Below are positions 28,357-55,526 of a DNA stretch of 64,000 nt, piece by piece; position 1 is the first letter of the stretch; every line of letters begins with the position of its first letter. The translations under genes were made by a program, and so were the position numbers. Location: positions 62,001 through 126,000 of the IMG/VR virus record IMGVR_UViG_3300042891_000711; one strand, written 5' to 3'. The notes under the pieces are model-generated. The model worked only from the letters and a program-made list of their open reading frames with translations. It ran no database searches and had not been told where the DNA came from.

Positions 28357-28364
28357 ATACATAT

Positions 28365-28532
28365 ATGAAAATAACCGATATTATCAAACGACCAGACTTA
28401 ACCGAAGATGCAACAGGCGGAGCAACCAGCTCTGGCGCTATTGCCACTGTACCAGGTGTTGGAACAGGTCCTAAAGTGGGCACATTGTTTGGTGGTACGT
28501 ATAAACAACCTAAAAAGAGAAAAACAAAATGA
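28365..28532 (+). CDS. small leader-bearing protein (55 aa, not in ORF track)
   Basis: MKITDIIKRPDLTE-DATGGATSSGAIA...KKRKTK; TAAATA 5 nt upstream; ATGA overlap with next gene. Confidence 0.75.
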   Translation: MKITDIIKRPDLTEDATGGATSSGAIATVPGVGTGPKVGTLFGGTYKQPKKRKTK

Positions 28533-32435: not shown

Positions 32436-33128
32436 ATGAGAATATATGATTTAAATCCCGTAGTTAACGAAGATAATGAAATGTCAGATGTCATTACTGC
32501 TCGCGGACTAGTAAATAGAGCATTAGATAATCCCGCTGCACGTCAGGAATACTTTGATTACATGACGCATCTGCGTAATAAACACGGTAAAGAATACAGC
32601 ACACGTATACATCAAAAAGCCACATCATTTGCTAAATCAGTAGACGAAACAATTAAAAAAGTAGGCAGCCAATACGAACTTGTTAGTAAATCGGGTAAGA
32701 ACCTAGGCAAGTATCCTACTAGAGCTGGTGCTGAGAAACGTGAGCAACAGGTTAATTATTTTAAACACGTTAAAGAAGATGCGTGGACTGGTGAAAATCC
32801 ACCGTGGCATAACGGTAATGATCAATGGAATGATGGTACTGACCAATGGCATAGTGCAGATGATGGTGCAGGTAGCAGTGCTGCAACTCCATCATCTGCA
32901 GGTCCGCTAACTGGTGAGATACCAGTTAAAGAAGAGTTTAATGCACAAGATGTTGTTAGTGTTGATGTTCCACTATTAATACGCTTACTTGAATATGCTC
33001 GCGAAGATGCTAAAACAGACATGGATTTACACACAGTAGCTGAACGATTAATTGATCTCAGTCAAGAAGGCGTTACACTAACAATGCAAGATTACGACAC
33101 AATTTGCAACACCAAGGAAACTGATTAA
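32436..33128 (+). CDS. modular putative internal head protein
   Basis: MRIYDLNPVVNE leader; modules after VDE, VKE, VKE. Confidence 0.65.
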   Translation: MRIYDLNPVVNEDNEMSDVITARGLVNRALDNPAARQEYFDYMTHLRNKHGKEYSTRIHQKATSFAKSVDETIKKVGSQYELVSKSGKNLGKYPTRAGAEKREQQVNYFKHVKEDAWTGENPPWHNGNDQWNDGTDQWHSADDGAGSSAATPSSAGPLTGEIPVKEEFNAQDVVSVDVPLLIRLLEYAREDAKTDMDLHTVAERLIDLSQEGVTLTMQDYDTICNTKETD

Positions 33129-38355: not shown

Positions 38356-38941
38356 TCTAGATCTGGATCGACTTAAACGCGATGCCAGACGTATTAATAA
38401 TAAAATTATCAAAGCCTATAGTAACTTAGCGGTGCCTGATAATAAGTACTATCAAAACGAGCTAGCTAAACAGTTAGAAGGTGTGCCTATGAGTAGTAAA
38501 TATCATGACTACTATAATGCATTGACCTTTCCTTATCAAGAAATACATCAACTATACCGAGAAGCCTGTACATTCTTTAAGGAAGTTAATCAATATGATC
38601 AACCTTACTGTGTACATGCTTGGTTAAACTATTTAGAAAAAGGCGACAGTATTCCATGGCATAATCATTGGGGTGCCTTAAGTGGCTTGCACGAAACTTA
38701 TGTTTGTAGTTATTACATTAATGCAGAATCTAGCACCACTATATACAAATTCCCCAACGAAACCTACAATGTAGCTTGCAAAAACAACACTATTAACATG
38801 TACGAAGATGTAGGTGATGTTCACATGGTAGAGCCGTGGCAAGGTAATGAGCCGCGCATTAGTATTAGTATGGACTTTGTACCGTTAAAATACGTACATG
38901 CTACACCGTTTGTCTTAAATACTTGGATGCCGGTTGTATAA
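38324..38941 (+). CDS. 2OG-Fe(II) oxygenase-like protein
   Basis: AWLNY...WHNH...SYYI...HMV...RISISMD. Confidence 0.7.
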   Translation: MTNPIQTKTINLDLDRLKRDARRINNKIIKAYSNLAVPDNKYYQNELAKQLEGVPMSSKYHDYYNALTFPYQEIHQLYREACTFFKEVNQYDQPYCVHAWLNYLEKGDSIPWHNHWGALSGLHETYVCSYYINAESSTTIYKFPNETYNVACKNNTINMYEDVGDVHMVEPWQGNEPRISISMDFVPLKYVHATPFVLNTWMPVV

Positions 38942-38974
38942 ATAAACATAGTATATAATTAAGGAAGATTTTCA

Positions 38975-41238: not shown

Positions 41239-41250
41239 TATTTATAAATA
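41239..41250. promoter_or_regulatory. bidirectional late-promoter palindrome
   Basis: TATTTATAAATA gives TATAAATA on both strands between divergent genes. Confidence 0.75.
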
Positions 41251-41279: not shown

Positions 41280-42017
41280 ATGAAAATAACTGAAGGTGGG
41301 AATGTATTTAAACTAGCTGATGGTAGCGAAGCAACCGGACGTATCAATCGTGCAGATGTCATTCCTACAGTTAAATGGTTAGAGCAATTAACAGGACTTA
41401 ATCTAGTAGACAATATGCTAGGGTCAACTGGCTACAAAGAAACAAGTGGCGACCTAGACCTAGCAGTTGATGTAAGTAAAATCAGCAAAGATGTACTGGT
41501 ACAACAACTATTAAAGAAAGGCATTGAACCTACTGACATTAAAAAGACAGGCGACAGCGTACATTTTAAAACACCCATCAACGGTGAAGCAAAGAACGGC
41601 TACGTACAAACTGACTTTATGTTTGGTGATCCAAACTTCCAACGTTTTAGTATGACAGGTAGTCCAGAAGGTAGCCCATTCAAAGGCATGCATCGTCATG
41701 TATTACTTGCTAGTATTGCTAAAGCACAGGGCATGAAATGGTCATACAAGAATGGCCTAATGGACCGTACTACAAACGAAGTTATTTCAAAAGATCCAAG
41801 TGAAATTGCACACAAACTATTCAATGGTAGTGCCGCTGATCTAGCATCAGTTGAAACTATCGTTGCTAAGATTAAAAATCTACCTAACTACAATGCCTTA
41901 GTAGCAGATGCACGTGAAACATTAGGCAAGGAAAATGTACAACTACCGGAATCACAGCAGGCAATAGTAGGCGAAGGTTCGGCAGCATGGTTTAAGAACT
42001 GGAAGTCAGTGCTGTGA
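41280..42017 (+). CDS. Pol-beta superfamily nucleotidyltransferase with leader
   Basis: MKITE leader; LGSTG...SGDLDLAVD...VQTDFM. Confidence 0.8.
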   Translation: MKITEGGNVFKLADGSEATGRINRADVIPTVKWLEQLTGLNLVDNMLGSTGYKETSGDLDLAVDVSKISKDVLVQQLLKKGIEPTDIKKTGDSVHFKTPINGEAKNGYVQTDFMFGDPNFQRFSMTGSPEGSPFKGMHRHVLLASIAKAQGMKWSYKNGLMDRTTNEVISKDPSEIAHKLFNGSAADLASVETIVAKIKNLPNYNALVADARETLGKENVQLPESQQAIVGEGSAAWFKNWKSVL

Positions 42018-42955
42018 GAGCTAAGGAGTTTATCTTAGAAGGCGGTTGGGCAAGTACTTTAACACAAGGTACACATATCACACCTGCACTAGTTGATGTT
42101 GTTGTACAATCATTACCTGCATTTGAACAAGCATTAAATGCTTTCTTAAAAACCAAAGACCTAGCACCAGTTAAGATAGGCACGCCAGTTGGTAGTACAA
42201 CATACTACAAACGCGACCTTGCACAAAATCCTCAACGTGAATACGGTGACATTGATGTTAACTTCTTTGTGCCACGCTTGTCTGATATGTCGGACAATGC
42301 TAACGAACAAACATACAGTTCAGCTATTAAAGAGTTTTGCGACAGTAACCCTAACTACTCAACTAACAACGGCACAAATGTTATAATTAAAGTAGGCGAC
42401 GAATATGTACAAGTTGACTTTGTTACAGCATACTATGAGAACGAACAGTGGAGTCGTGCCTTAGGACCAGAGTACAATGTTAAAGGTGTACTAAGCGCAA
42501 GTTTATACTCATCACTAGCAGAAGCATTAAATCTCAGCTTTGGTGGACGTGGAGTACAGGTTAAATTACAAAATGGTGTGCCAGTTAGTTTTAGACAAAC
42601 TAAAGATACAGAGCTTAAAACCATAACAAATAATCCCGACACATGGGCAGTTGATATTGCTACATTCCTTGGTGCTAAAACTATCAGCGCACGTTTAGCC
42701 AAGTATCCAGGTATGGGTGACGAAATAAAAACTTCAAATACTATTAACAGTATTGTTGGCATTGCTGAAAGTTTAGGCCGTCCTGAGTTAATAGAACAAG
42801 TGAAAGCAATTTACATAAGTAAAATAAGCAAGGCAGTTAATAGCAGTAAGTTTGATAAAGCTGTGACATCAGAAGCTAAGAAAAAAGCTGAAGATACCAA
42901 AGCATTATTAACAAGAGAAGCACAGCGTATATTAGGACAGTTTGATGCGATTTAA
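42014..42955 (+). CDS. Pol-beta superfamily nucleotidyltransferase with leader
   Basis: MRAKEFILE leader; VGSTTY...YGDIDV...VQVDFV. Confidence 0.78.
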   Translation: MRAKEFILEGGWASTLTQGTHITPALVDVVVQSLPAFEQALNAFLKTKDLAPVKIGTPVGSTTYYKRDLAQNPQREYGDIDVNFFVPRLSDMSDNANEQTYSSAIKEFCDSNPNYSTNNGTNVIIKVGDEYVQVDFVTAYYENEQWSRALGPEYNVKGVLSASLYSSLAEALNLSFGGRGVQVKLQNGVPVSFRQTKDTELKTITNNPDTWAVDIATFLGAKTISARLAKYPGMGDEIKTSNTINSIVGIAESLGRPELIEQVKAIYISKISKAVNSSKFDKAVTSEAKKKAEDTKALLTREAQRILGQFDAI

Positions 42956-44297
42956 AGAATTTTTAAGAGAATACAGCAGAGAGAAAACAGTCAATGTCTT
43001 TGGCAACAAACTTGTTGCGGCATTAGGCAAGGATAAGAGCCACACTCTTTCTGGTACACAGTTAGGCACGGATCGTGCGTTCATTGATCAAAAGATCAAA
43101 GTTAATGATATGATTACAGCAGAACAACGTCAAATAATTATCGATCACATCATGGTTGTAATTGAAAATTCTGACCCTACAGCAAACAAAGAGTATGTAC
43201 AGTGGTTGACTAAAGTATATGCTAACCAAGGTATTAAACTAGAAGATATAATAAGTCGTGGTAACAGTGCGCTTAAAATGTATCACGAATTCAAAGTTAA
43301 AAAAATATTACCAGCAGAATATAGAGACATTGGTCGCATTGACTTTGCTGGCTTAGAAGCAATAGCACAAAATCTTGACCTACGTAATGCCTTAGCCGCT
43401 AAAGAAGAACAAGAAGCCGCTAAGACTGTAGACAAGGGCGAAGCTGAAACTGTATTTGAAAATGCTGCAGTGCGTATCATTGTACCCAAGAATGAAGCAG
43501 CATCCGGTTACTATGGACAAGGTACACGTTGGTGTACTGCTGGACGTGACAACAATATGTACGATCGTTATGCTCGTGATGGTGACTTGTATATCTTACT
43601 ACCTAAGAAACCCGACTACGAAGGTGAGAAATATCAACTACACTTTAGTAGCAATCAGTTTATGGACGAAGGTGATAACTACGTAGACAGCGTAAAAGAC
43701 CTAATAACTAAACGCTTTGGCAATTTATTACCATTCTTTATGGAGCGCGAGCCTTCACTTAAAGATTGGTTAGTGTTTACTCCAGATGAGGTATTAAAAC
43801 CATTATTGGCTAAAATTAAAACAGCCGTAAACGACCACGTAAGCGAAATAGTCAACGACTGGGAAGTACAAGACGACTACTGGTGGGATCACCTACGCAG
43901 TGAAGGATATGTATATCCAGAAGGTCACGACGAAGAAGGCGAGATTGACTTTGATGCTGCGGCAGATGCCGATCTAAGTTACACTGATTGGAACTACGAA
44001 GCCAGCGACTTTATTCGAACAATTAATAATGCTGTAGATCTAACGCCAGAAGAAGTGCGCGAAATTGCCCAAGAGGAAGAAGATGATTACAACGGAGATG
44101 TGGGTGTTAATGACCTTGATACTATCATAGAACGCAGTATATCAAAAAATATTGGTAGAAATAGTAGTGACGGTGGTGTGATAGAATGGATTAAAGATCA
44201 CATTTATATTAAGAAAACTGGTGGTGATGGAGCATGGGACGTTAGTTTGCTGTACACAGACAAAGAAGGAAAGCGTGCAGAATACGCAATACACTAA
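42945..44297 (+). CDS. PcfJ-like domain protein with leader
   Basis: MRFKEFLRE leader; YGQGTRWCTA...KYQLHF. Confidence 0.65.
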   Translation: MRFKEFLREYSREKTVNVFGNKLVAALGKDKSHTLSGTQLGTDRAFIDQKIKVNDMITAEQRQIIIDHIMVVIENSDPTANKEYVQWLTKVYANQGIKLEDIISRGNSALKMYHEFKVKKILPAEYRDIGRIDFAGLEAIAQNLDLRNALAAKEEQEAAKTVDKGEAETVFENAAVRIIVPKNEAASGYYGQGTRWCTAGRDNNMYDRYARDGDLYILLPKKPDYEGEKYQLHFSSNQFMDEGDNYVDSVKDLITKRFGNLLPFFMEREPSLKDWLVFTPDEVLKPLLAKIKTAVNDHVSEIVNDWEVQDDYWWDHLRSEGYVYPEGHDEEGEIDFDAAADADLSYTDWNYEASDFIRTINNAVDLTPEEVREIAQEEEDDYNGDVGVNDLDTIIERSISKNIGRNSSDGGVIEWIKDHIYIKKTGGDGAWDVSLLYTDKEGKRAEYAIH

Positions 44298-44298
44298 T

Positions 44299-45000
44299 AT
44301 GAGAGCTAGAGACTTTACAAAGAACAACGTTGCTTATAACAAACAACTAAATCCAGTGGCCTGGGACAATAATCAATTAAACGATGAAGTGCGAGATCGA
44401 CTACTAGAGATTGCTGAACGTTTTGTCAGCTACTTAGAGATTCCTAATTTTAAAGTAGAAGATGTTGTACTCACAGGTAGTATGGCCAACTACAACTGGA
44501 CTAAGTTTAGTGATTTTGATGTGCATGTTGTTACTAACTACAGTGACCTACAATGTGATGATATTGCCGAAGCGTTCTATCGTGCCAAGAAACAAATTTG
44601 GAATGACGGGCACGATATTACTATCTACGGTTATGATGTAGAATTGTATGTAGAAGATGTTGCGCAACCTCCAGTTAGCGAAGGTGTATATAGTTTGTTA
44701 AACAATAAGTGGCTTAAAACTCCCGACTTTAAAGTGCCATCAATCGATCGTGCTAGTGTTAATGCCAAAGTATTAGATCTACGTAGCCAAATTGATCATG
44801 CTATTGTAGCCGCTGATGATCCAGAAGATATTAAACGTATATCAGAAAAGATTCGTAAAATGCGCCGTGCAGGATTAGATGCTGGCGGCGAATTCAGCAC
44901 AGAAAATCTAGCATTTAAAATCCTACGTAATATGAAGTACATGGATAAATTAAGTAAAGCATATCGTCAACAACAAGACGATGATTTGAGTTTAAAATAA
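44299..45000 (+). CDS. Pol-beta superfamily nucleotidyltransferase with leader
   Basis: MRARDF leader; LTGSMANYNWTKFSDFDVH...DVELYVED; start reassigned to 44299. Confidence 0.82.
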   Translation: MRARDFTKNNVAYNKQLNPVAWDNNQLNDEVRDRLLEIAERFVSYLEIPNFKVEDVVLTGSMANYNWTKFSDFDVHVVTNYSDLQCDDIAEAFYRAKKQIWNDGHDITIYGYDVELYVEDVAQPPVSEGVYSLLNNKWLKTPDFKVPSIDRASVNAKVLDLRSQIDHAIVAADDPEDIKRISEKIRKMRRAGLDAGGEFSTENLAFKILRNMKYMDKLSKAYRQQQDDDLSLK

Positions 45001-46004
45001 TGAGAGCACGTGAATTTATAACTGAAGCTATTAGCAACAAGCGAGTAATTCAGTATATTAAACAACATCACCCTAGAGGCGAATGGACTGCGGTTGCTAA
45101 TAACATGGTTATGAAATACCCAAAATACGAATTATCGTGGGTTCCTGTTAGCCAACTTAAAATAGATGGTGACGAGCCAATTGAAGATCCGTATAGTCGT
45201 GTTATTGACGTAGATCAAAGTTATGCAAGCAGACTTTCTACACAAGATATTGAAGATAATCCTATTGTCATAGACGCACAAGGACATATCTTAGATGGTA
45301 ATCATCGTGCTTGGCAAGCAAAACAATTAGGCATGGATATGATACCAGCGTATGTGCCTGTTAAAGAATTAACTGAATCACTAGATCTTGAAGTTGAAGA
45401 ATTTTTAAATAATCTAACACCGGAAGATGTTGGTGTAGACGAAGTAGGCGATTACCGTGTACACTTTGAAGGCTTTACTGATGACTGCCAATCCAGCAGA
45501 GATTACTGTCGTAATCCAAAAAAAGTGTTTCAAGAAGTATTTGCTGATTTTATCCGCCGTGAGGGTGGACAACAACCTGTAGCGTCAGGTATGGTAGGTG
45601 ATGATGACTACCCTATTCTATACAGCGTGTTTAAGGACACAGTTAGAAAAAATGTGCCGTTAACTCCAGAAAAAGCATACCAAATAGCATATAATAAAAA
45701 GAAACCGTGGCCTACAGGCAGTGCTGAAGAGCAACTAATTCGTAGTGATTTCCAATTAAGTGATTTGTATGATAGGTATGTGTTGAATCAGACCGATATG
45801 AGAGCAAATGAATTTATAAGCGAAGACGAAGGATTAAGCTATCAAGGTAATTGTACCGATGATGATGTTATTGAATATATTTTCGGTGATGCCACTACGT
45901 TTGCGCAGTTGGTTGACGAATACGGCGATGAGTTTGTATTAGACGATTTAGTAGTAAAGTATAATCCAGAAGAAGATATACACTACTTCTATTATAAGAG
46001 CTAA
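45000..46004 (+). CDS. ParB/Srx-like domain fusion protein with leader
   Basis: MRAREFITE leader; PIVIDAQGHILDGNHR; second in-frame leader MRANEFISE at 45798. Confidence 0.75.
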   Translation: MRAREFITEAISNKRVIQYIKQHHPRGEWTAVANNMVMKYPKYELSWVPVSQLKIDGDEPIEDPYSRVIDVDQSYASRLSTQDIEDNPIVIDAQGHILDGNHRAWQAKQLGMDMIPAYVPVKELTESLDLEVEEFLNNLTPEDVGVDEVGDYRVHFEGFTDDCQSSRDYCRNPKKVFQEVFADFIRREGGQQPVASGMVGDDDYPILYSVFKDTVRKNVPLTPEKAYQIAYNKKKPWPTGSAEEQLIRSDFQLSDLYDRYVLNQTDMRANEFISEDEGLSYQGNCTDDDVIEYIFGDATTFAQLVDEYGDEFVLDDLVVKYNPEEDIHYFYYKS

Positions 46005-46005
46005 T

Positions 46006-46314
46006 ATGAGAGCCAATGAATTCTTAACCGAGTCGTACGAGTTTTTTGATACTATAGTAGATCAAATCAAAGCTCAAGTGCCAGCAGAAGAAATATGGTT
46101 TCACGGTAGCAGGGTAATTGGAACTGAACACGATGAAAGTGACTGGGATATCTTAGTTATTGTTCCTGATAACATAGTAGGTGATGAGTATATCAATGTT
46201 ACTAGGATATTACAATCTATAGCAAGAAGATACGAAAATTTTGATATACAACCTGCTCGTGCGTCAAACAATATTGCCCGTATAGCAAGAGAAGAAGGCG
46301 AACGAATAGATTAA
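46006..46314 (+). CDS. minimal nucleotidyltransferase (MNT-like) with leader
   Basis: MRANEFLTE leader; IWFHGSRVIG...SDWDILV. Confidence 0.85.
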   Translation: MRANEFLTESYEFFDTIVDQIKAQVPAEEIWFHGSRVIGTEHDESDWDILVIVPDNIVGDEYINVTRILQSIARRYENFDIQPARASNNIARIAREEGERID

Positions 46315-46316
46315 AG

Positions 46317-46395
46317 AACACCTACCTTAGGCCCATACTCGTTATGGTGTTTGGTGTGGCCGGCTGCTGGCCTGGAGGGATGCCAAAAGTGAGCA
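46317..46395 (+). ncRNA. candidate structured RNA (family not identified)
   Basis: GC-rich intergenic island with stems ACACC/GGTGT, CCATA/TATGG, GGCCGG/CTGGCC. Confidence 0.5.
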
Positions 46396-46422
46396 AGATT
46401 AAACAAGCGATAAATACTTAAT

Positions 46423-49400
46423 ATGCGATATAGTCAAATTAAACAAGCCTTAAAAGAAGCAGAGATCATTGATGAAGTATCAATGAGTCCTTCCAGCCTA
46501 GAAGCGTTCGCTAACAGTCCGGAAGCTGATGGTATGCTTATGGGTATTGAATTTGAAATGTGCGTACCCAATGCCAGCTCAGGTGACTATGAGCCTGAGT
46601 GGGAATACGATTACGAATACAACGAAAGCGCCTACAATATTGATGATATTCTTAACTTCTTCCGCAACGGTGATTTCAGTAACATGAGTCGTAGTGACTC
46701 TGAGCGTTATCGTAGTGAACTATATGACGAATACCTAGACTGGACTAATGAAGCATCTAATCGCTATATAGACGATAACGTAGATGAATTAGACAGCCTT
46801 ATCCGAGATCAACTTGAAGGCGAAATTGATCGTGATGATGTCAAAGATGCGGCACGTACTCGCTGGATAGAAGCAAACCCTGACGAAGATCCCGACAGTG
46901 ACGATGCTGATGCAGAAATTCGTGTCATAACATTAGAAATGATCGAAGATCGAGTAGATGAATTAATGGCAGATACCAGCGGTAGAGAGTATCAATATGC
47001 CTACGACCAAGCACGTCAAGAAATGGAAGATGACTTCCGTAACGGTGGTGATGGCGATGAAGGTGCTTGGTTAAGCGACATTGGCATTGGTGATATGCAG
47101 GACGCTGAACGTCATTGGGGCTTTGATTGGCCTCACATGTATGACGCTAACGAAGGCAATGATGGTGGTGATGCAGACATAGATCAAGTAGCAGATGACT
47201 TTTATGGTGCTACTGGATATGAAGCACGCGGGTTTAGTAATTACCACAGTGGCAATCGTAGTCAGCAACAACAAGAAGGTTACTTTATTATTGAACCCGA
47301 TGCTTCAATTGATGCTGAACAAGGTGATGCAGGCTTAGAGTTTATCAGTCCAGCTATGCCACTTAAAGATGGCTTGACTATGTTGAAAAAAGTTAAACAA
47401 TGGGCTAAGTTGGCAGGTTGTTATACTAACAAATCAACGGGCCTACACATGAACATCAGTGTGCCTAACATGACCACTGATAATCTAGACTATGTTAAAC
47501 TAGCATTATTCCTAGGTGACGAATACGTACTTCAAGAGTTTGGTCGTCAGTACAATACCTATGCTAAAAGTGCCATGAAGATTGTTAAAGAAAAGATTCA
47601 GGCCAATCCAGAAAACGCCACAGAATTGTTGGCCAAGATGAAAGAACATCTTGGAGCGGCAGCTAGTAAACTAGTACACAGTGGCGTTACACAAAAGTAT
47701 ACAAGTATCAATACCAAAGGCAACTACGTAGAATTCCGTGGTCCAGGTGGTGATTATCTAAACGAAGACATACCTAAACTTGTTAATACTGCTCTACGCC
47801 TAGCACAAAGCCTACGTATTGCCACAGACGAGTCAGCATACAAACAAGAATACGCTAAGAAATTATACAAACTAATCAGCCCAGAAGGCGAGTGGACTGA
47901 TCCTAATAACTCAGTAGCATTGTTCAGTCGCTATGCTCTAGGACAGATCAACAAATCAGAATTAGTAAGTAATGTTCGTCAAGCACAAACAGCTCGTAAA
48001 GAGAAGAAAGGCGAAGAAGTACAGTACTGGGTAATGAATAAAGATGGCACTGGTGGTAAGCAAATGGTATTTGCCGCTAGTGAAACAGCCGCTATCATCC
48101 TAGGCGGTAAACAAATGGGCATGAACCGTGAACAAAGTATCAGCAAACTTAAAGCTGAATTGTTTGTAGATACTAACAAAGAAAATACACCGCCAGCATC
48201 AGTACCACTTAGTTGGATTGATTGGATAACAGATACACTACCTACGGTTACTGTAGATACAGCAAATTCTGTAAGAGAAAGAATAAAAGATGGCAGAGAT
48301 AATTTAGATGCAGATGCCAATGGTTGGATAGTTAGACAGATTGACAACGAACTACGCAGTAGAATGGATCAAGGAGTAGTCGACGGCAATGAAACACGCT
48401 GGAAGGTTTATTTTGCTCGTGGTAGACATGTAGATCAAGACCCGGTATTCGTCGATGCTGATAGTCCTCGTCAGGCTAAACTTAAAGCCGCAGATATATT
48501 CATGCGAGAGCAACGGATATCAGTGGGCCTACACGATTTAGAAGCCATTGCTACCACACAAGATGCTGGCCGTCCAGAAGTAACTTGGAATATTATAAAC
48601 GGTCTAGGTGAACCTGCTGGTACTGTTAACGCAAGAACCAGTGACGAAGCACTACATGTATACGGTAGTGTTAATAATGTCGATACTAGATACTATAGAG
48701 CAACACCAGTTGAAACAACGCCAAGTGCAGGCACGTACACTAGTTTCGCAGATGCGCAGGCTGCGGCAGATAGAGCAAACGCTGGTAATACCACTAACAG
48801 AGAAGTGTTTGACGGTTTAGCCAATAACTGGCAAGAGTGGCTTCAGGGTGTTGGTAGACATACCGACGGTAATCTACAGCGTATACTTGATAATATGGCC
48901 CAGGGTGTTAATGCTCACTATACCAACTTAACTCTTGACGAGAAAGACTTTATTATTAATACTGTTAATCAAGAAATACGCCGCCGTAGTAGTAATAACG
49001 AATTAGCTGCCAACGCAGGTGGTGCCGAAAACGCAGTGCGTGATAGTTTGCCCCAAGCACATCGTGAGTGGTTAGACAATGTAGCCGATAAGAGTGACAT
49101 GGATCTAATCAACGTATTCCGTAATGTCAGCACAACCGCAGTATTAAATGATCAACAGACTGCTTACTTTAGAGTTATTATTAAACGTGAACTACGTCGT
49201 CGTGGTATCAGCGACAGTGAGCGCGATGCTAGCGAACAAGGCGCAACTCCAGTACCTAATTATGAGATATATGCGCCAGACAGCGGAGTAGTAGTACACC
49301 AATTCCACGCCGACAACGAAACAGACGCAAATAGAAAGTTCAGTGAATTTGAACAGAATTACGAATCAGATTACGATTTCCATCACGAGTATCGCAGAAT

Positions 49401-49650
49401 TGGCCCTGCACAACAGGAATTACCATTGGAACCCGCAGTGCCACAGACCACTGCTACAGATTTTGAAGTAGTTAAAGCTGATGGTAGTGTGGTGTCAAAC
49501 ATACGAGGTGCTGATATGGTCTATGCTCATCGTAAAGCACGTGAATTAGAACAAGACCTGGGCTTAGAAAGTGGTGCGTTAACAGTTAGAGCATTACCAA
49601 CAACAAACGAATCTATAAAACAATTACGCCGATTGGCAGGATTAGTATAA
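46423..49650 (+). CDS. putative amidoligase (COOH-NH2 ligase) multidomain protein
   Basis: GIEFEM, IEPDASI, GLEFISP, TNKSTGLHMNIS, KYTSIN, VEFRGPGG; leader ending LKE; C-terminal LRRLAGLV. Confidence 0.82.
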   Translation: MRYSQIKQALKEAEIIDEVSMSPSSLEAFANSPEADGMLMGIEFEMCVPNASSGDYEPEWEYDYEYNESAYNIDDILNFFRNGDFSNMSRSDSERYRSELYDEYLDWTNEASNRYIDDNVDELDSLIRDQLEGEIDRDDVKDAARTRWIEANPDEDPDSDDADAEIRVITLEMIEDRVDELMADTSGREYQYAYDQARQEMEDDFRNGGDGDEGAWLSDIGIGDMQDAERHWGFDWPHMYDANEGNDGGDADIDQVADDFYGATGYEARGFSNYHSGNRSQQQQEGYFIIEPDASIDAEQGDAGLEFISPAMPLKDGLTMLKKVKQWAKLAGCYTNKSTGLHMNISVPNMTTDNLDYVKLALFLGDEYVLQEFGRQYNTYAKSAMKIVKEKIQANPENATELLAKMKEHLGAAASKLVHSGVTQKYTSINTKGNYVEFRGPGGDYLNEDIPKLVNTALRLAQSLRIATDESAYKQEYAKKLYKLISPEGEWTDPNNSVALFSRYALGQINKSELVSNVRQAQTARKEKKGEEVQYWVMNKDGTGGKQMVFAASETAAIILGGKQMGMNREQSISKLKAELFVDTNKENTPPASVPLSWIDWITDTLPTVTVDTANSVRERIKDGRDNLDADANGWIVRQIDNELRSRMDQGVVDGNETRWKVYFARGRHVDQDPVFVDADSPRQAKLKAADIFMREQRISVGLHDLEAIATTQDAGRPEVTWNIINGLGEPAGTVNARTSDEALHVYGSVNNVDTRYYRATPVETTPSAGTYTSFADAQAAADRANAGNTTNREVFDGLANNWQEWLQGVGRHTDGNLQRILDNMAQGVNAHYTNLTLDEKDFIINTVNQEIRRRSSNNELAANAGGAENAVRDSLPQAHREWLDNVADKSDMDLINVFRNVSTTAVLNDQQTAYFRVIIKRELRRRGISDSERDASEQGATPVPNYEIYAPDSGVVVHQFHADNETDANRKFSEFEQNYESDYDFHHEYRRIGPAQQELPLEPAVPQTTATDFEVVKADGSVVSNIRGADMVYAHRKARELEQDLGLESGALTVRALPTTNESIKQLRRLAGLV

Positions 49651-50315
49651 TGAACTTATTTGAAATGTTTGAACAAGGGCCACCTAAGCCAACGCTGATA
49701 GATGCATTGCGTGATTTTTTGCCCATCGCAGTTCAACATTTAAAATTAGATCACATTCCTAAAATTCGTTTAGTTAAATCATTAGATGATACAACATTTG
49801 GTCGTTATGTCAATGATGAGCAAGTAATTTATGTAGTTGTTGATAATCGCAATCCTGTAGATATCTTGCGTACACTAGCACACGAAATGGTACATTATGC
49901 GCAGGGTCAAGATGATCAACTTGATAGCACTTCCGGCGAAACAGGCAGTCCAATTGAGAACGAAGCCAACGCAGAAGCAGGTGTTATTATGCGGTTGTTT
50001 AATCAAAAACATCCTAGCTATATGCAGGCCGATCCAATAGCATTACCTGAAGCATGGAGTGCAAAATACAAAAAGAGTATTAATTGCAGTAACCCAAAAG
50101 GATTCAGTCAAAAGGCGCACTGTGCCGGACGTAAGAAAACTGATGAGAACTTTGCAGATGGTAAGAAGCCAGGCCGTAAAGGACTAGCCAAACGTTCAGG
50201 TGTTGACTGTGGTCAAAGCATAAGTAAATTAAGAAGCGTTGCAAAAAATAGCAGTGGCGAAAAGCAACGTATGGCACACTGGTGCGCTAATATGAAATCA
50301 GGGAGAAGTAAATGA
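49650..50315 (+). CDS. zincin-like (HEXXH) protein plus basic Cys-pair modules
   Basis: MNLFEMFE leader; LRTLAHEMVH...ENEAN. Confidence 0.72.
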   Translation: MNLFEMFEQGPPKPTLIDALRDFLPIAVQHLKLDHIPKIRLVKSLDDTTFGRYVNDEQVIYVVVDNRNPVDILRTLAHEMVHYAQGQDDQLDSTSGETGSPIENEANAEAGVIMRLFNQKHPSYMQADPIALPEAWSAKYKKSINCSNPKGFSQKAHCAGRKKTDENFADGKKPGRKGLAKRSGVDCGQSISKLRSVAKNSSGEKQRMAHWCANMKSGRSK

Positions 50316-50989
50316 AGTCAAATGAATTTTTATCAGAATCTGAAAAGCAAAAAGGTGTTGACGGTAAAGCCTGCTGGGATGGTTATAAGCGCATGGGCAC
50401 TAAGAAGAAAGGTGGCAAGACTGTTGACAACTGTGTTAAGATGGAAGAATCCATTGATGAGTACGATGACGAAGCCGGCATGGTTGACAGTAATTTAGAA
50501 ACAATTAAACGTGCTGCTGAAGAATTAGATCAAGTGTTAGGCCAAGATGACAACATGGCTGAATGGGCACAGGAAAAACTAGCAGTAGTTAAGAGCATGT
50601 TAGTTGCTGTTAAAGACTATGTAGTTAGTCAAAAATCTACAGGCATCGATCCACAAATAGACGAAGAACTAGAAGAAACATACCACGGTGATGAGTTCTT
50701 CGAAGCCTACGGCGAAATGTGGTTTAACGAAGATGAACAATTAGACGAAGCTGAATATCACGGACGTAAAGTTCCCCTAGGTAAACCAATGCAGGGTGAT
50801 GTTAAGAAGTTTAAAGTATATGTTAAAGATCCTAGCACAGGTAACATCAAAAAAGTAAACTTTGGTGATCCTAATATGCGTATTAAGAAGTCAAACCCTG
50901 CGAGACGTAAATCATTTAGAGCACGTCACAACTGTGCAAACCCGGGTCCACGCACTAAAGCACGTTACTGGTCATGCCGCAAGTGGTAA
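50312..50989 (+). CDS. modular basic internal head-like protein
   Basis: MKSNEFLSE leader; ACWDGYK...DNCVK; RKSFRARHNC...YWSCRKW. Confidence 0.72.
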   Translation: MKSNEFLSESEKQKGVDGKACWDGYKRMGTKKKGGKTVDNCVKMEESIDEYDDEAGMVDSNLETIKRAAEELDQVLGQDDNMAEWAQEKLAVVKSMLVAVKDYVVSQKSTGIDPQIDEELEETYHGDEFFEAYGEMWFNEDEQLDEAEYHGRKVPLGKPMQGDVKKFKVYVKDPSTGNIKKVNFGDPNMRIKKSNPARRKSFRARHNCANPGPRTKARYWSCRKW

Positions 50990-50990
50990 T

Positions 50991-51410
50991 ATGACCAACT
51001 GGGAAACTTACGTTAAAGAATCCTATGAGCTTATTAAAGAAGCTGAAACTGCACTATCAATCACATTAGAACACAATGTTGAAGCATACGTTGTACACTT
51101 GTTCGCACACTTCCTAGACAAACCCAATGTCAATACAGAACCTGTGGGCATTAAACTAATGGCCAGTACCAATCTACCCGTAGCACAACGTAAGATATTA
51201 CTCAAAGATGTAGGCGATGAATGCTTGTTAATCAATGCTATGGAATGGAACCGACGTCGTTGGCCTACTGATACCTACTATGCTGAAATGGGGCAATCTG
51301 CTTATGTTACACGTGCTGTTGTGGCTAGGCCTGTAGAAGATATCTACGACGATTTGGCTATGGAATTTACTACAGTTACACAGGTTCTACGTAGATGTAG
51401 AATTAGTTAA
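50991..51410 (+). CDS. hypothetical protein
   Basis: ATG 50991 (MTNWETY); EAYVVHL...LKDVGDECLL...MGQSAY. Confidence 0.7.
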   Translation: MTNWETYVKESYELIKEAETALSITLEHNVEAYVVHLFAHFLDKPNVNTEPVGIKLMASTNLPVAQRKILLKDVGDECLLINAMEWNRRRWPTDTYYAEMGQSAYVTRAVVARPVEDIYDDLAMEFTTVTQVLRRCRIS

Positions 51411-52862: not shown

Positions 52863-55526
52863 ATGAGTTATGTTGACGCACTGTTTGACAGGGCAAAAGA
52901 TCGTATCTACGTTGTAGAAAGAAAAGAAGGCATGCGCGAGTATGTCGAATACCCAGCAAATTATGTCATGTACATTGATGACCCTAAGGGTAAGTATCGC
53001 ACAGTATATGACACTCCAGTAAGTCGTTTCAGCACACGTGTTGGCAAGGAATTCCACAAAGAAACACGTATTCAATCGGGCAAGCGTATATGGGAAAGTG
53101 ATATCAATCCTGTGTTCCGTTGTTTATCAGATAACTATCTTGGTATTGATTCACCTAAACTACAAACTGCGTTTTGGGATATTGAAACAGACTTTGACCC
53201 AGCACGTGGGTATGCTCCTACCAGCGATCCGTTTAATCCTATTACAGCTATATCAGTTTACTTAGATTGGCTAGACAAGTTAGTTACCTTAGTTATTCCG
53301 CCCAAGAGCTATAGTTGGGAAACTGCACAGGAAATATGTGACCAGTATGAAAACTGTTTTATGTTTGAACGTGAAGCAGACATGTTGGATACATTCCTTA
53401 ATCTAATTGATGATGCAGATGTCTTAAGTGGCTGGAACAGTGAGGGCTATGATATTCCATATACTATTGGGCGTGTTACACGTGTGTTAAGCAAAGATGA
53501 CACTAGACGCTTTTGTCTATGGGGTCAGTATCCAAAACAGCGTGAATTTGAACGTTTTGGTGCCGCAAACATCACTTTTGACCTCATTGGCAGGGTTCAT
53601 TTAGACTACATGCAGTTGTACCGCAAATACACCTATGAAGAGCGACATAGTTATAGTTTAGATGCTATTGGTGAATATGAATTAGATGAGCGTAAGGTTG
53701 CCTATGAAGGTACATTGGATCAACTGTACAACAAAGACTTTCCTAAGTTCATTGACTATAACCGTCAGGATACTATGTTGCTAGGAAAACTAGATAAGAA
53801 GTTACGCTTCTTAGACTTAGCCAATGAACTTGCGCATGATAACACAGTGTTGCTACAGACTACAATGGGTGCTGTAGCAGTTACAGAGCAGGCTATCATC
53901 AATGAAGCACATCAACAAGGGTTAATTGTTCCTAATCGTAAGAATAGAGATGACATGGGCGATACACAAGCGGCAGGTGCTTATGTAGCCACTCCAAAAG
54001 CAGGCATGCATGATTGGATTGGTTCGGTTGATATTAACTCCCTGTATCCTAGTGCAATTCGTGCGCTTAACATGGGACCAGAAACTATTATTGGACAGAT
54101 ACGTCCAATTATGACAGACCATTATATCAATGAAAAGATGGCCAATAAGTCAAGTTTTGCAGATGCTTGGGAGGGCTTGTTCGCTACCCTAGAGTATACT
54201 GCGGTTATGGAAAGTAAACCCGGTGTTGAACTTACAATCGATTGGGAGGCTTCGGGAGAAAGTACTGTACACAGTGCGGCAGAAGTATGGACACTAATCT
54301 TCGATAGCAATCAACCATGGATACTCAGTGCTAATGGTACCATCTTTAGCTTTGAGAAAGAAGCAGTTGTTCCGGGTTTGCTAAAACGTTGGTATGCCGA
54401 ACGTAAAGAACTACAGGCTAAGATGCGTTCATGTACAGATCCAGAAGAGATTGCGTTCTGGGATAAGCGTCAGTTAGTTAAGAAGATTAACTTGAATAGC
54501 TTGTATGGTGCCTTATTGAATCCGGGCTGTCGTTTCTTTGATAAGCGTATTGGACAATCAACTACACTAACTGGTCGTACTATTGCTCGACACATGGATG
54601 CGTTTATTAATGAATGCTTCACTGGTGTATATGATCACACTGGTGATGCTATTATCTATGGTGATACAGACTCATGTTATTTTAGTGCTTGGCCTATGAT
54701 CAAAGATGAAGTTGAAGCTGGTAACATGGAGTGGAATGCCAGTATTGCTATTAAGCTGTATGACGATATTTCGGACCAGGTCAATGAAAGTTTTCCCGCA
54801 ATGATGGAACGTAGCTTTCACGTGCCACGCAGTATGGGCAGTGTGATCAAAGGCGGGCGTGAACTGGTTGCAAGTAAAGGCTTATTCATTAAGAAGAAAC
54901 GCTATGCTGTGCTGATTACAGACTTAGATGGCAAACGCATGGATACCCACGGCAAGCCTGGCAAGGTTAAGGCTATGGGCCTAGACTTGAAACGCAGTGA
55001 TACTCCAAAAGTAGTGCAGGATTTCTTAAGTGAGATTTTACTAGCGGCACTTACTGGTGTAGACAAAACTGCTATTATTGACATGGTGCGCGAGTTTAAG
55101 ATTGCGTTCCAAGATAGACCTGCTTGGGAGAAAGGTACACCCAAACGTGTAAACAATCTAACCAAGTTTACCAAAGCAGAAGAACGTGAAGGTCGTGCCA
55201 ATATGCCCGGACATGTACGTGCGGCTATGAACTGGAATAACCTAAAACGCATGCACGGTGATAACTATTCAATTAACATTGTCGATGGTATGAAAACTAT
55301 TGTGTGTAAGTTAAAAGATAATCCAATTGGATTTACCAGTGTGGGCTATCCAACAGATGGCACTCATATTCCGCAATGGTTCAAAGACTTACCTTTCGAC
55401 AATGACCTAATGGAGTCGACAATTGTTGATCAAAAAGTAGAAAACTTACTCGGTGTGCTTAAATGGAACATTACAGAAAGCACAGACATTAAAACTACAT
55501 TTGATGCATTGTTTAGTTTTGATTAA
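52863..55526 (+). CDS. family B DNA polymerase
   Basis: Exo DIET, GWNSEGYD; pol DINSLYPS, KINLNSLYG, YGDTDS, KKRY. Confidence 0.97.
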   Translation: MSYVDALFDRAKDRIYVVERKEGMREYVEYPANYVMYIDDPKGKYRTVYDTPVSRFSTRVGKEFHKETRIQSGKRIWESDINPVFRCLSDNYLGIDSPKLQTAFWDIETDFDPARGYAPTSDPFNPITAISVYLDWLDKLVTLVIPPKSYSWETAQEICDQYENCFMFEREADMLDTFLNLIDDADVLSGWNSEGYDIPYTIGRVTRVLSKDDTRRFCLWGQYPKQREFERFGAANITFDLIGRVHLDYMQLYRKYTYEERHSYSLDAIGEYELDERKVAYEGTLDQLYNKDFPKFIDYNRQDTMLLGKLDKKLRFLDLANELAHDNTVLLQTTMGAVAVTEQAIINEAHQQGLIVPNRKNRDDMGDTQAAGAYVATPKAGMHDWIGSVDINSLYPSAIRALNMGPETIIGQIRPIMTDHYINEKMANKSSFADAWEGLFATLEYTAVMESKPGVELTIDWEASGESTVHSAAEVWTLIFDSNQPWILSANGTIFSFEKEAVVPGLLKRWYAERKELQAKMRSCTDPEEIAFWDKRQLVKKINLNSLYGALLNPGCRFFDKRIGQSTTLTGRTIARHMDAFINECFTGVYDHTGDAIIYGDTDSCYFSAWPMIKDEVEAGNMEWNASIAIKLYDDISDQVNESFPAMMERSFHVPRSMGSVIKGGRELVASKGLFIKKKRYAVLITDLDGKRMDTHGKPGKVKAMGLDLKRSDTPKVVQDFLSEILLAALTGVDKTAIIDMVREFKIAFQDRPAWEKGTPKRVNNLTKFTKAEEREGRANMPGHVRAAMNWNNLKRMHGDNYSINIVDGMKTIVCKLKDNPIGFTSVGYPTDGTHIPQWFKDLPFDNDLMESTIVDQKVENLLGVLKWNITESTDIKTTFDALFSFD

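What the first reader, a model, noticed from the sequence alone, without database searches (positions are those of the whole stretch)
46317..46395. GC-rich structured RNA candidate inside the cargo array
Seen: ~80-nt intergenic island, much more GC-rich than other spacers. Stems: ACACC(46318)/GGTGT(46353) enclosing CCATA/TATGG and possibly CCTA/TAGG, then GGCCGG-CTG-CTGGCC and TGG/CCA, ending AAAAGTGAGC, which could pair with GCTGCT. No U-tract, so not a typical terminator; not tRNA-like. Inference: ribozyme, processing site or small RNA; I cannot assign a family.
Basis: partly seen in the sequence, partly recalled or inferred. Interest (0 to 1): 0.68.

Follow-up and report, generated by a model that had tools for sequence, protein, structure and literature searches.

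The report
Conserved structured RNA in jumbo phages
The GC-rich 80-base spacer is a real, conserved folded RNA element of an uncatalogued family, found once per genome in a group of freshwater jumbo phages at the spot where they swap accessory genes; what it does is still unknown.

Summary
Window 46315-46395 is a GC-rich island (0.56 against 0.38 for the genome) in the only sizeable gap of a tightly packed + strand operon. Related phage and lake-metagenome contigs hold the same element in 56 distinct contexts. It has a variable hairpin P1 (sometimes with an inner hairpin P2), an adjacent 6-bp hairpin P3, and a nearly invariant 22-nt purine-rich tail (UGGAGGGAUGCC, three variable bases, AGUGAGC). 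P1, P2 and P3 are backed by compensatory changes: 94% of cells paired against 73% in shuffles, and 10 of 16 pairs changed on both sides. G-U pairs put the fold on the + strand. The P3-plus-tail half is 84-100% identical where the neighbouring gene is only 64-85% identical. The element is single-copy and syntenic, lying between an NTase/ParB-like block and an amidoligase gene, with cargo genes inserted on either side. It matches no Rfam family, tRNA, terminator, cultured phage or bacterial genome. Function is not shown. My best guess (about 0.4) is a cis-acting leader or regulatory RNA read by a protein or the ribosome through the invariant tail. A riboswitch, ribozyme, processed small RNA or DNA-level site remain open. 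It is a new family of a known general kind, of moderate interest.

The parts
46006..46314 (+). Upstream gene: 102-aa minimal nucleotidyltransferase (a cargo gene). Its stop codon TAA (46312-46314) abuts the element.
   Evidence: Pfam Polbeta 2.8e-7 and NTP_transf_2 4.1e-6. The gene is absent upstream of the element in many relatives.
46312..46317 (+). Conserved 5' flank (UAA-AGA of UAAAGAAC). It supplies the stop codon of whatever gene lies upstream.
   Evidence: Alignments: AAGAAC, or a close variant ending in AC, precedes P1 in nearly all members.
46318..46322 (+). P1, 5' strand (ACACC)
   Evidence: All 5 pairs show changes on both sides; helix 94.8% paired. Recovered by RNAalifold on its own.
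46325..46331 (+). Conserved unpaired CCUUAGG in the P1 interior (CCUAGG or CCCAGG in other members)
   Evidence: Alignments. No partner was found by covariation.
46333..46347 (+). P2 inner hairpin (CCAUA / CUCGU / UAUGG). Replaced by other stems with UUCG or UCCG loops in relatives, and absent in the short variants.
   Evidence: 2 of 5 pairs with double changes; a U-G wobble in L025.
46353..46357 (+). P1, 3' strand (GGUGU)
46358..46372 (+). P3 hairpin: 6 bp with a CUG loop. The outer 3-4 bp covary; the inner C-G, G-U and G-C pairs and the loop are invariant.
   Evidence: 100% of cells paired, 3 pairs with double changes. Five stem versions occur on several different 5'-domain backgrounds.
46373..46394 (+). 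Nearly invariant purine-rich tail: UGGAGGGAUGCC, AAA, AGUGAGC
   Evidence: Identical in all members except one G-to-A change and three variable linker bases. P3 plus tail is 84-100% identical where the adjacent CDS is 64-85%.
46395..46422 (+). A/U-rich leader up to the amidoligase start. It holds GATAAATA six bases before the ATG.
   Evidence: 96% identical in L020 although the protein is 69% identical over its first 150 residues. The same leader is kept upstream of amidoligase when a GNAT gene is inserted.
46423..49650 (+). Downstream gene: 1075-aa protein with an Amidoligase_2 domain. It is the constant downstream neighbour (0-2 genes away) in relatives.
   Evidence: Pfam PF12224 1.3e-6; synteny table.

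Best explanation
This is a functional, structured RNA element of about 80 nt, transcribed on the + strand inside a long polycistronic phage message. It consists of two adjacent hairpins, P1 (with an optional inner P2) and P3, which hold out a 22-nt, nearly invariant, purine-rich single-stranded tail containing GGAGG. It sits at one fixed syntenic point of a freshwater jumbo-phage lineage, between an NTase/ParB-like gene block and the amidoligase gene. This is a hot spot where accessory genes are gained and lost. I infer that it acts in cis as a leader or regulatory module for the gene(s) that follow. In this model a macromolecular reader (a phage or host RNA-binding protein, or the 30S subunit via the Shine-Dalgarno-like GGAGG) recognises the invariant tail and the P3 loop, and sets the translation or fate of the downstream message. 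Shown: the fold, its strand, its conservation, its copy number and its synteny. Inferred: that it acts in cis, and what reads it.
For: Homologues occur in 56 distinct contexts. Covariation supports P1, P2 and P3: 94.2% of cells paired against 73.3% in shuffles (0 of 500 reach it). 10 of 16 pairs changed on both sides. The covariation score is 0.368 against 0.083, and slid controls stay at or below 0.064. RNAalifold finds P1 and P3 independently. An invariant G-U in P3 and wobbles in P1 and P2 fit only the + strand. UUCG and UCCG tetraloops cap P2 in relatives. P3 plus tail is 84-100% identical next to a CDS that is 64-85% identical. There is one copy in the 219-kb record. The position is fixed relative to conserved genes, with cargo inserted on both sides. 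A same-strand gene starts 10-51 nt after the element in about 50 of the 56 contexts, often at exactly +10 or +11 with a shared leader. The host system uses Shine-Dalgarno sites: 34% of ORFs against 4% background. Metatranscriptome contigs from two studies carry the element joined to its upstream and downstream genes.
Against: No binding partner, ligand or regulatory outcome is shown. Single-sequence folding is no better than shuffles. In three lineages no same-strand gene follows directly: L053/L059 have an intrinsic terminator 12 nt after the element, and L014/L066 and L026/L064 have a convergent gene. So the element can function, or at least persist, at the 3' end of a transcription unit. 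GGAGG lies 27 nt or more from the next real start codon, too far for a normal SD. A simple standby site would not need 22 invariant bases. All instances are orthologous, so co-orientation with the flanking genes is close to a single evolutionary observation. RNA-library contigs may contain DNA and cannot show transcript ends.
Confidence: 0.4

Rival explanations
1. Metabolite- or ion-sensing riboswitch. The hairpins and the conserved tail would fold into a compact (pseudoknotted) aptamer, and ligand binding would change exposure of the GGAGG tail or formation of a terminator.
For: The pattern is riboswitch-like: covarying stems of variable length around invariant unpaired bases. The element lies upstream of genes. 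In L053/L059 an intrinsic terminator follows 12 nt after it, like an expression platform. Neighbouring genes are small-molecule-using enzymes: amidoligase, GNAT, GT2, radical SAM, sulfotransferase, NTase.
Against: There is no Rfam hit at E<=10. No covariation supports a pseudoknot, because the tail hardly varies. The genes directly downstream are functionally mixed. Most contexts have no terminator or SD-sequestering helix, and no + strand terminator is predicted downstream in the window.
Confidence: 0.12
2. Small self-cleaving ribozyme, or a site for a host or phage RNase, that cuts the polycistronic message between cistrons and leaves hairpins that protect the products.
For: It has the size, conserved core and covarying stems of small ribozymes, and lies between co-transcribed genes in a phage. 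Its boundaries are sharp: it starts at the upstream stop codon and ends just before the next ribosome-binding region.
Against: No match to any ribozyme model in Rfam. RNA-library contigs run through the element without a break, though contigs cannot show ends. It is single-copy and strictly syntenic, unlike most phage-borne ribozymes (own knowledge).
Confidence: 0.12
3. Stand-alone small RNA, cut out of the operon or formed as a 3'UTR-derived species. It would act in trans through the invariant tail on a host RNA or protein, for example as a decoy against a host defence.
For: In L053/L059 the element is the last feature before an intrinsic terminator. A 22-nt invariant single-stranded stretch resembles a seed or binding platform. 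It sits in a locus of likely injected or anti-defence-type cargo proteins.
Against: No conserved promoter lies upstream, since the upstream sequence is varying coding DNA. There is no complementary target of 12 nt or more in the phage's own 219 kb. No look-alike (such as a CRISPR repeat) appears in 185,579 species genomes with the 19-base pattern. The host is unknown, so host targets were not testable.
Confidence: 0.12
4. Passive RNA stability or termination element: GC-rich hairpins at the end of the upstream cistron that block 3' exonucleases or pause the polymerase.
For: It begins within a few bases of the upstream stop codon in every context. It lies at the end of a transcription unit in three lineages.
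Against: Such a role does not explain 22 invariant unpaired bases or the invariant P3 loop with its G-U pair. There is no U-tract. RNA-library contigs read through it.
Confidence: 0.08
5. DNA-level element: a strand-specific single-stranded DNA hairpin or a protein-binding site (replication origin, recombination or cassette-exchange site, ParB-type site) rather than an RNA.
For: It is single-copy and flanked on both sides by insertion and deletion of genes. A ParB-like gene lies nearby. P3 is a near-palindrome and CCUAGG-type palindromes occur in P1. It lies 5-10 kb from the replication module.
Against: Covariation across a 30-40-nt variable insert (P1) and conserved G-U/G-T wobbles argue for a folded single strand, not duplex recognition. 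UUCG and UCCG loops are RNA-typical (own knowledge). No integrase or recombinase was seen in the neighbouring genes scanned. It lies in a transcribed operon and in RNA libraries.
Confidence: 0.07

Closest known systems
Phage antitermination RNAs that act in cis: HK022 put (two adjacent stem-loops) and lambda nut (linear box plus hairpin). Comparison from own knowledge.
   Same: Two adjacent hairpins plus a conserved linear stretch. One or two per genome. Located inside long operons and independent of which genes follow. In L053/L059 an intrinsic terminator comes right after it.
   Different: No sequence resemblance. No boxA-like motif. No terminators are predicted downstream in the window. Binding to RNA polymerase or Nus factors was not testable.
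Small riboswitch aptamers whose conserved 3' tail carries the Shine-Dalgarno sequence (preQ1-II, SAM-II/SAM-V). Comparison from own knowledge.
   Same: Hairpin(s) followed by a conserved purine-rich tail with GGAG; stems covary while unpaired bases stay fixed.
   Different: No hit to these or any Rfam models. No pseudoknot is supported. GGAGG is 27 nt or more from the real start codon. Downstream genes are functionally mixed.
Small self-cleaving ribozymes common in phage-like intergenic DNA (pistol, hatchet, twister-sister, hammerhead)
   Same: 50-80 nt, a conserved core with covarying stems, lying between co-transcribed genes.
   Different: No covariance-model match. Single-copy and strictly syntenic. 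Cleavage untested.
PeSL cassettes (early promoter plus stem-loop) of T4-type phages that flank shuffled genes in hyperplastic regions. From own knowledge; I recall Arbiol, Comeau and Krisch 2010 but did not check it.
   Same: A stem-loop module at the borders of swapped accessory genes in a phage with T4-like replication genes.
   Different: PeSLs are many per genome and carry a promoter. This element is single-copy, far more conserved, and has no promoter consensus.
The 8,495 unnamed 'DNAVirus_X' candidate structured RNAs predicted from IMG/VR (PMC10690425)
   Same: Same data source (IMG/VR intergenic regions), same size range (median 65 nt) and same kind of evidence (covariation).
   Different: Whether this element is among them could not be checked, because no supplementary files are held. 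That catalogue assigns no function to most entries.

Membership tests
Any Rfam 15 family (4227 models, including riboswitches, ribozymes, phage RNAs) | Score at or above the family's gathering threshold, or at least a suggestive E-value | tested here: not met
   No match in the whole window at gathering score. None at E<=10 in 46200-46520. None on the element in 8 other members.
tRNA / tmRNA | Cloverleaf or tmRNA fold detected by ARAGORN | tested here: not met
   0 genes in the window. No tRNA in the whole 219-kb record.
Intrinsic (Rho-independent) terminator | GC-rich hairpin directly followed by a U-tract | tested here: not met
   P3 is followed by UGGAGGG, not by U's. The terminator scan lists nothing here. 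A true terminator follows the element separately in L053/L059.
Riboswitch (generic) | Conserved aptamer fold with covarying stems and fixed junction bases | tested here: met
Riboswitch (generic) | Consistent association with genes of one pathway, and an expression platform | tested here: inconclusive
   Downstream genes are mixed: amidoligase, GNAT, GT2, radical SAM, sulfotransferase and unknowns. A terminator is seen in only one lineage.
Riboswitch (generic) | Direct, selective ligand binding | not testable with these tools
   Needs in-line probing or ITC.
Self-cleaving ribozyme | Site-specific self-scission | not testable with these tools
   Needs in vitro transcription assays. Contigs from RNA libraries cannot show ends.
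T4-type PeSL cassette | Many copies per genome, each with an early promoter next to the stem-loop | tested here: not met
   One copy in 219 kb by BLAST and by covariance model. No promoter-like site inside the element on the + strand.
RNA anti-CRISPR / solitary repeat mimic | Close similarity to a CRISPR repeat of a host genome | tested here: inconclusive
   The 19-base pattern of P3 loop plus tail gave only 4 chance hits in 185,579 species genomes. The host is unknown and a looser mimic would be missed.
Integron attC-like recombination site | One site per cassette, with an integrase nearby | tested here: not met
   A single site per genome. No integrase among the neighbouring proteins scanned.
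Protein-coding small ORF | Conserved reading frame, with substitutions concentrated at synonymous sites | tested here: not met
   Member lengths differ by non-multiples of 3 (68-82 nt). Changes are compensatory in stems, and would-be third positions are invariant. The AUG becomes AUA in some members. The GUG mini-ORF ends at inconsistent places.

The most novel reading that the evidence does not exclude
The element is the first representative of a new class of catalytic or ligand-sensing RNA (a small self-cleaving ribozyme or a riboswitch) that gates expression of the swappable, probably capsid-packaged cargo enzymes of a jumbo-phage lineage.
Probability: 0.2. Interest if true: 0.8.

Novelty: new variant of a known kind. 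Interest (0 to 1): 0.5.

Why it matters
Jumbo phages from lakes are almost unstudied and none of this lineage is cultured. A single-copy RNA whose 41-nt core has stayed nearly fixed while neighbouring proteins drifted to 40-65% identity must matter to the phage. It marks the exact spot where the phage exchanges accessory enzymes that look like injected, defence-related cargo. If it is a control element for that cargo, it would show how such phages express newly acquired genes. If it proves to be a ribozyme or riboswitch, it would add a new class. The alignment and structure are good enough for direct bench tests (self-cleavage, in-line probing, reporter fusions). Against this, thousands of unnamed structured-RNA candidates are already known in viral metagenomes, so without a function it is one more well-supported motif.

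Tried and rejected
1. Thermodynamic signal. MFE was no better than shuffles on either strand. The consensus fold lies 1 kcal/mol above the MFE.
2. Known families. Rfam and ARAGORN were negative.
3. Repeats or extra copies in the genome. None found.
4. Cultured phages and bacterial genomes. No match.
5. Coding readings. An ORF through the element is not conserved. AUG is not conserved (AUA in L118, L126, L169, L217). The GGAGG-N10-GUG mini-ORF stops anywhere from -33 to +26 relative to the next ATG, so translational coupling is not a general feature.
6. Not supported.
7. My own candidate tertiary pairings. These were the CCU of the P1 interior with GGAGGG, the 5' strand of P3 with GCC(A/U) of the tail, and GGUGU with AUGCC. 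Each fits some variants and fails in others (for example the GCGC-stem members). The tail varies too little to test them.
8. Antisense target in the phage. Only chance 11-mers.
9. T4 late-promoter reading of GATAAATA at 46409. It is too close to the ATG compared with the two TATAAATA sites that sit about 30 nt upstream of ORFs. Left open.
10. More distant amidoligase loci (L027-L038). They lack the element.
11. The csRNA catalogue of PMC10690425. It could not be searched because no supplements are held. A full-text search for the motif letters gave only unrelated PCR primers.
12. A second GC-rich gap at 28357-28509. It appears to hold a small ORF missed by my 75-aa cut-off (read by eye from the sequence).

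Full report
**Setting.** The window is bases 62001-126000 of a 218.9-kb IMG/VR virus record, estimated 62% complete. Its T4-type DNA polymerase (52863-55526; phrog_262, 1.6e-190) is closest to three groups of cultured phages:

- Sinorhizobium phage Phosso, 51% identity.
- Agrobacterium phage Atu_ph07, 46%.
- Rak2-like E. coli jumbo phages, 43%.

This is therefore an uncultured jumbo phage. DNA and RNA runs that hold the stretch are all lake or freshwater metagenomes. Genes from 41280 to 51410 form one tightly packed + strand block with overlapping stops and starts. The finding fills its only sizeable gap, 46315-46422. That gap lies between a 102-aa minimal nucleotidyltransferase and a 1075-aa amidoligase-domain protein.

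- The island has GC 0.56 against 0.38 for the record. It is the second GC-richest of 54 intergenic gaps, and only 0.5% of all 80-nt windows reach that value.
- Folding the single sequence gives no signal. MFE z-scores are about +1 on both strands.
- The structure proposed below lies 1 kcal/mol above the MFE.
- Rfam finds nothing in the window at gathering thresholds, and nothing at E<=10 around the element.
- ARAGORN finds no tRNA.
- The element occurs once in the 219-kb record, both by BLAST and by covariance model.

**Relatives.** I fetched loci that encode relatives of the amidoligase and BLASTed the spacer against them. The element was 82-99% identical even where the amidoligase protein is only 44-66% identical.

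- An exact-pattern scan with the P3 loop plus the first half of the tail found 32 IMG/VR contigs.
- A looser pattern added only two more members, with a single G-to-A change.
- The same pattern found 54 metagenome contigs, 46 of them true members.
- It gave only 4 chance hits in 185,579 species genomes.
- Cultured phage records have no match.
- In all there are 56 distinct sequence contexts and 38 unique cores.
- More distant amidoligase loci lack the element.

**Anatomy.**

- A short A-rich flank (AAGAAC or similar) often supplies the stop codon of the upstream gene.
- P1 is a hairpin of variable length (46318-46322 with 46353-46357 in the window). Its interior holds a conserved CCUUAGG, CCUAGG or CCCAGG.
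- In the long variants P1 also holds an inner hairpin P2 (46333-46347). In some relatives P2 is capped by UUCG or UCCG tetraloops.
- P3 follows after 0-2 nt (46358-46372). It is 6 bp with a CUG loop. The inner C-G, G-U and G-C pairs and the loop never change, while the outer pairs do.
- A 22-nt tail follows (46373-46394): UGGAGGGAUGCC, three variable bases, then AGUGAGC. It is otherwise invariant.

**Covariation.** I used a model-guided alignment of 38 members with 22 distinct rows.

- 94.2% of cells form standard pairs, against 73.3% in shuffles (0 of 500 shuffles reach it).
- 10 of 16 pairs show changes on both sides.
- The covariation score is 0.368, against 0.083 for shuffles and at most 0.064 when partners are slid by 1-3 columns.
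- All five P1 pairs covary, and P3 is paired in 100% of cells.
- RNAalifold recovers P3 from a plain MAFFT alignment, and P1 plus P3 from the model-guided alignment.
- The five P3 stem versions (GGCC, GCGC, UGGC/GCCA, GGGC/GCCC, AGGC/GCCU) occur on several different 5'-domain backgrounds. The double changes therefore arose, or were kept, repeatedly.
- The invariant G-U in P3 and the wobbles in P1 and P2 would be A-C mismatches on the other strand. The fold therefore belongs to the + strand, the sense strand of the flanking genes.
- P3 plus tail is 84-100% identical between loci whose adjacent coding sequence is 64-85% identical in DNA and 37-89% in protein.

The alignment was fitted to the structure and the sequences are related, which inflates such counts somewhat. 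The slid controls and the independent RNAalifold result answer most of that concern.

**Context.** A synteny table shows that the element is not a roaming module. In nearly all genomes it lies downstream of the same conserved genes: homologues of 41280, the 259-aa NTase at 44221, the ParB-like 45000 and 42942. It lies 59-1550 nt upstream of the amidoligase homologue. The protease-like 49650 homologue and the DNA polymerase follow 5-10 kb further on.

- Between these anchors, 0-2 accessory genes are inserted on either side.
- These include the window's own 102-aa NTase, GNAT, GT2, radical SAM/SPASM, sulfotransferase, a sigma-70 region-4 protein and several unknown families.
- A same-strand gene starts 10-51 nt after the element in about 50 of the 56 contexts, very often at +10 or +11 with a shared short leader.
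- There are three exceptions. L053/L059 have the element followed after 12 nt by a clear intrinsic terminator and then a promoter-like AT-rich gap. L014/L066 and L026/L064 have a convergent gene next.
- Metatranscriptome contigs from two studies contain the element joined to the upstream NTase gene and to the variant with a GNAT gene inserted downstream. These are contigs, so they show presence in RNA libraries but not ends, strand or level.

**What it most likely is.** The fold, its strand, its purifying selection, its single copy and its fixed position are shown. The function is inferred.

- The combination of covarying clamps and a long, invariant, unpaired purine tract next to the following gene's start region fits best a cis-acting leader or regulatory RNA. 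It would be read by a macromolecule, either a phage or host RNA-binding protein or the ribosome.
- The phage's genes do use Shine-Dalgarno sites: 34% of ORFs against 4% background. The tail carries GGAGG.
- A transcription-level role of the put or nut type would also explain why cargo can be inserted behind it, and why a terminator follows it in one lineage.
- I put this family of cis-acting explanations at about 0.4.
- A riboswitch (0.12) is weakened by the mixed downstream functions and the lack of expression platforms.
- A ribozyme or processing site (0.12) and a processed trans-acting RNA (0.12) cannot be tested here. For the latter, no target of 12 nt or more exists in the phage's own genome.
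- A passive stabiliser (0.08) does not explain the invariant tail.
- A DNA-level site (0.07) is disfavoured by the long-range covariation and the wobble pairs.

**What did not hold.**

- Coding readings fail. Member lengths differ by non-multiples of three. The AUG in the tail becomes AUA in some members. A GUG mini-ORF behind GGAGG ends at inconsistent places.
The tail varies too little to test them.
- GATAAATA six bases before the amidoligase ATG is conserved, but it is placed unlike the two TATAAATA sites that sit about 30 nt upstream of ORFs 38975 and 41280.

**Comparison and novelty.** The element belongs to no Rfam family. It works most like known cis-acting phage leader RNAs or small riboswitch-type elements, but it meets the defining tests of none (see the membership table).

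A 2023 survey predicted 8,495 unnamed structured RNAs from IMG/VR (PMC10690425). This motif may be among them, but that could not be checked.

I rate it a new family within a known general kind. It is well supported as real and functionally open. Interest is moderate now, and would be high if the tail proves to bind a ligand or to catalyse cleavage.

Noticed in passing
window 46006-46035; also L004:1966-2000, L049:10831-10860, L062:10306-10335 (- strand), L061:1871-1900: The swapped cargo proteins around the element share an N-terminus (MRANEFLTE, MRAREFIIE, MLTLELFED, MIILELVEK, MRAKEFLKE). It resembles the T4 capsid targeting sequence MKTYQEFIAE, which is cleaved from internal proteins (PMC8442874). 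The 'cargo array' may therefore encode capsid-packaged, injected proteins.
   Followed up: partly
L012:2447-2990 compared with window 46395-46400: Presence/absence polymorphism. A 170-aa GNAT-like gene sits exactly between the element and the amidoligase leader in L006, L007, L008 and L012, with short GA/TTAA-type microhomology at the junctions. Metatranscriptome contigs carry this variant.
   Followed up: partly
window 46395-46422: The 28-nt A/U-rich leader before the amidoligase ATG is itself unusually conserved (96% against L020). It holds (G/A)ATAAATA exactly 6 nt before the ATG in several lineages. This could be a late-promoter-like or translation signal.
   Followed up: partly
window 38937-38944 and 41243-41250: TATAAATA (the T4 late-promoter consensus, from own knowledge) occurs only 3 times in 64 kb against 10.8 expected. 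Two of these sit about 30 nt upstream of ORFs 38975 and 41280. The latter would drive the operon that contains the element.
   Followed up: no
L053:4625-4660 (- strand), same in L059: In one lineage the element is rearranged to lie upstream of the 41280 homologue. It is followed 12 nt later by a strong intrinsic terminator (11-bp stem plus U-run) and an AT-rich promoter-like gap.
   Followed up: partly
window 44221-51410: The neighbourhood combines two NTases, a ParB-like protein, an amidoligase and a metalloprotease-like protein. Relatives add GNAT, GT2, radical SAM/SPASM and sulfotransferase genes next to the replication module. This set is reminiscent (own knowledge) of polyvalent or injected anti-defence proteins, or of DNA hypermodification clusters.
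   Followed up: no
G000:C1:42929-43341 (outside the window): ARAGORN calls a permuted tmRNA with a tag ending in ALAA. No tRNA genes are found in the whole 219-kb record. This is possibly a false positive.
   Followed up: no
window 4580-5101 and 34309-35772: There are three tandem-like 120-nt repeats spaced about 200 nt apart, and four Gly-rich 51-nt repeats inside the 927-aa tail-fibre-like ORF at 33128-35911.
   Followed up: no
window 28357-28509: This is the only intergenic gap with higher GC (0.57) than the finding. It appears to contain a small ORF starting at ATG 28366 rather than an RNA. That reading is by eye from the sequence; RNA fold z is -1.6.
   Followed up: partly
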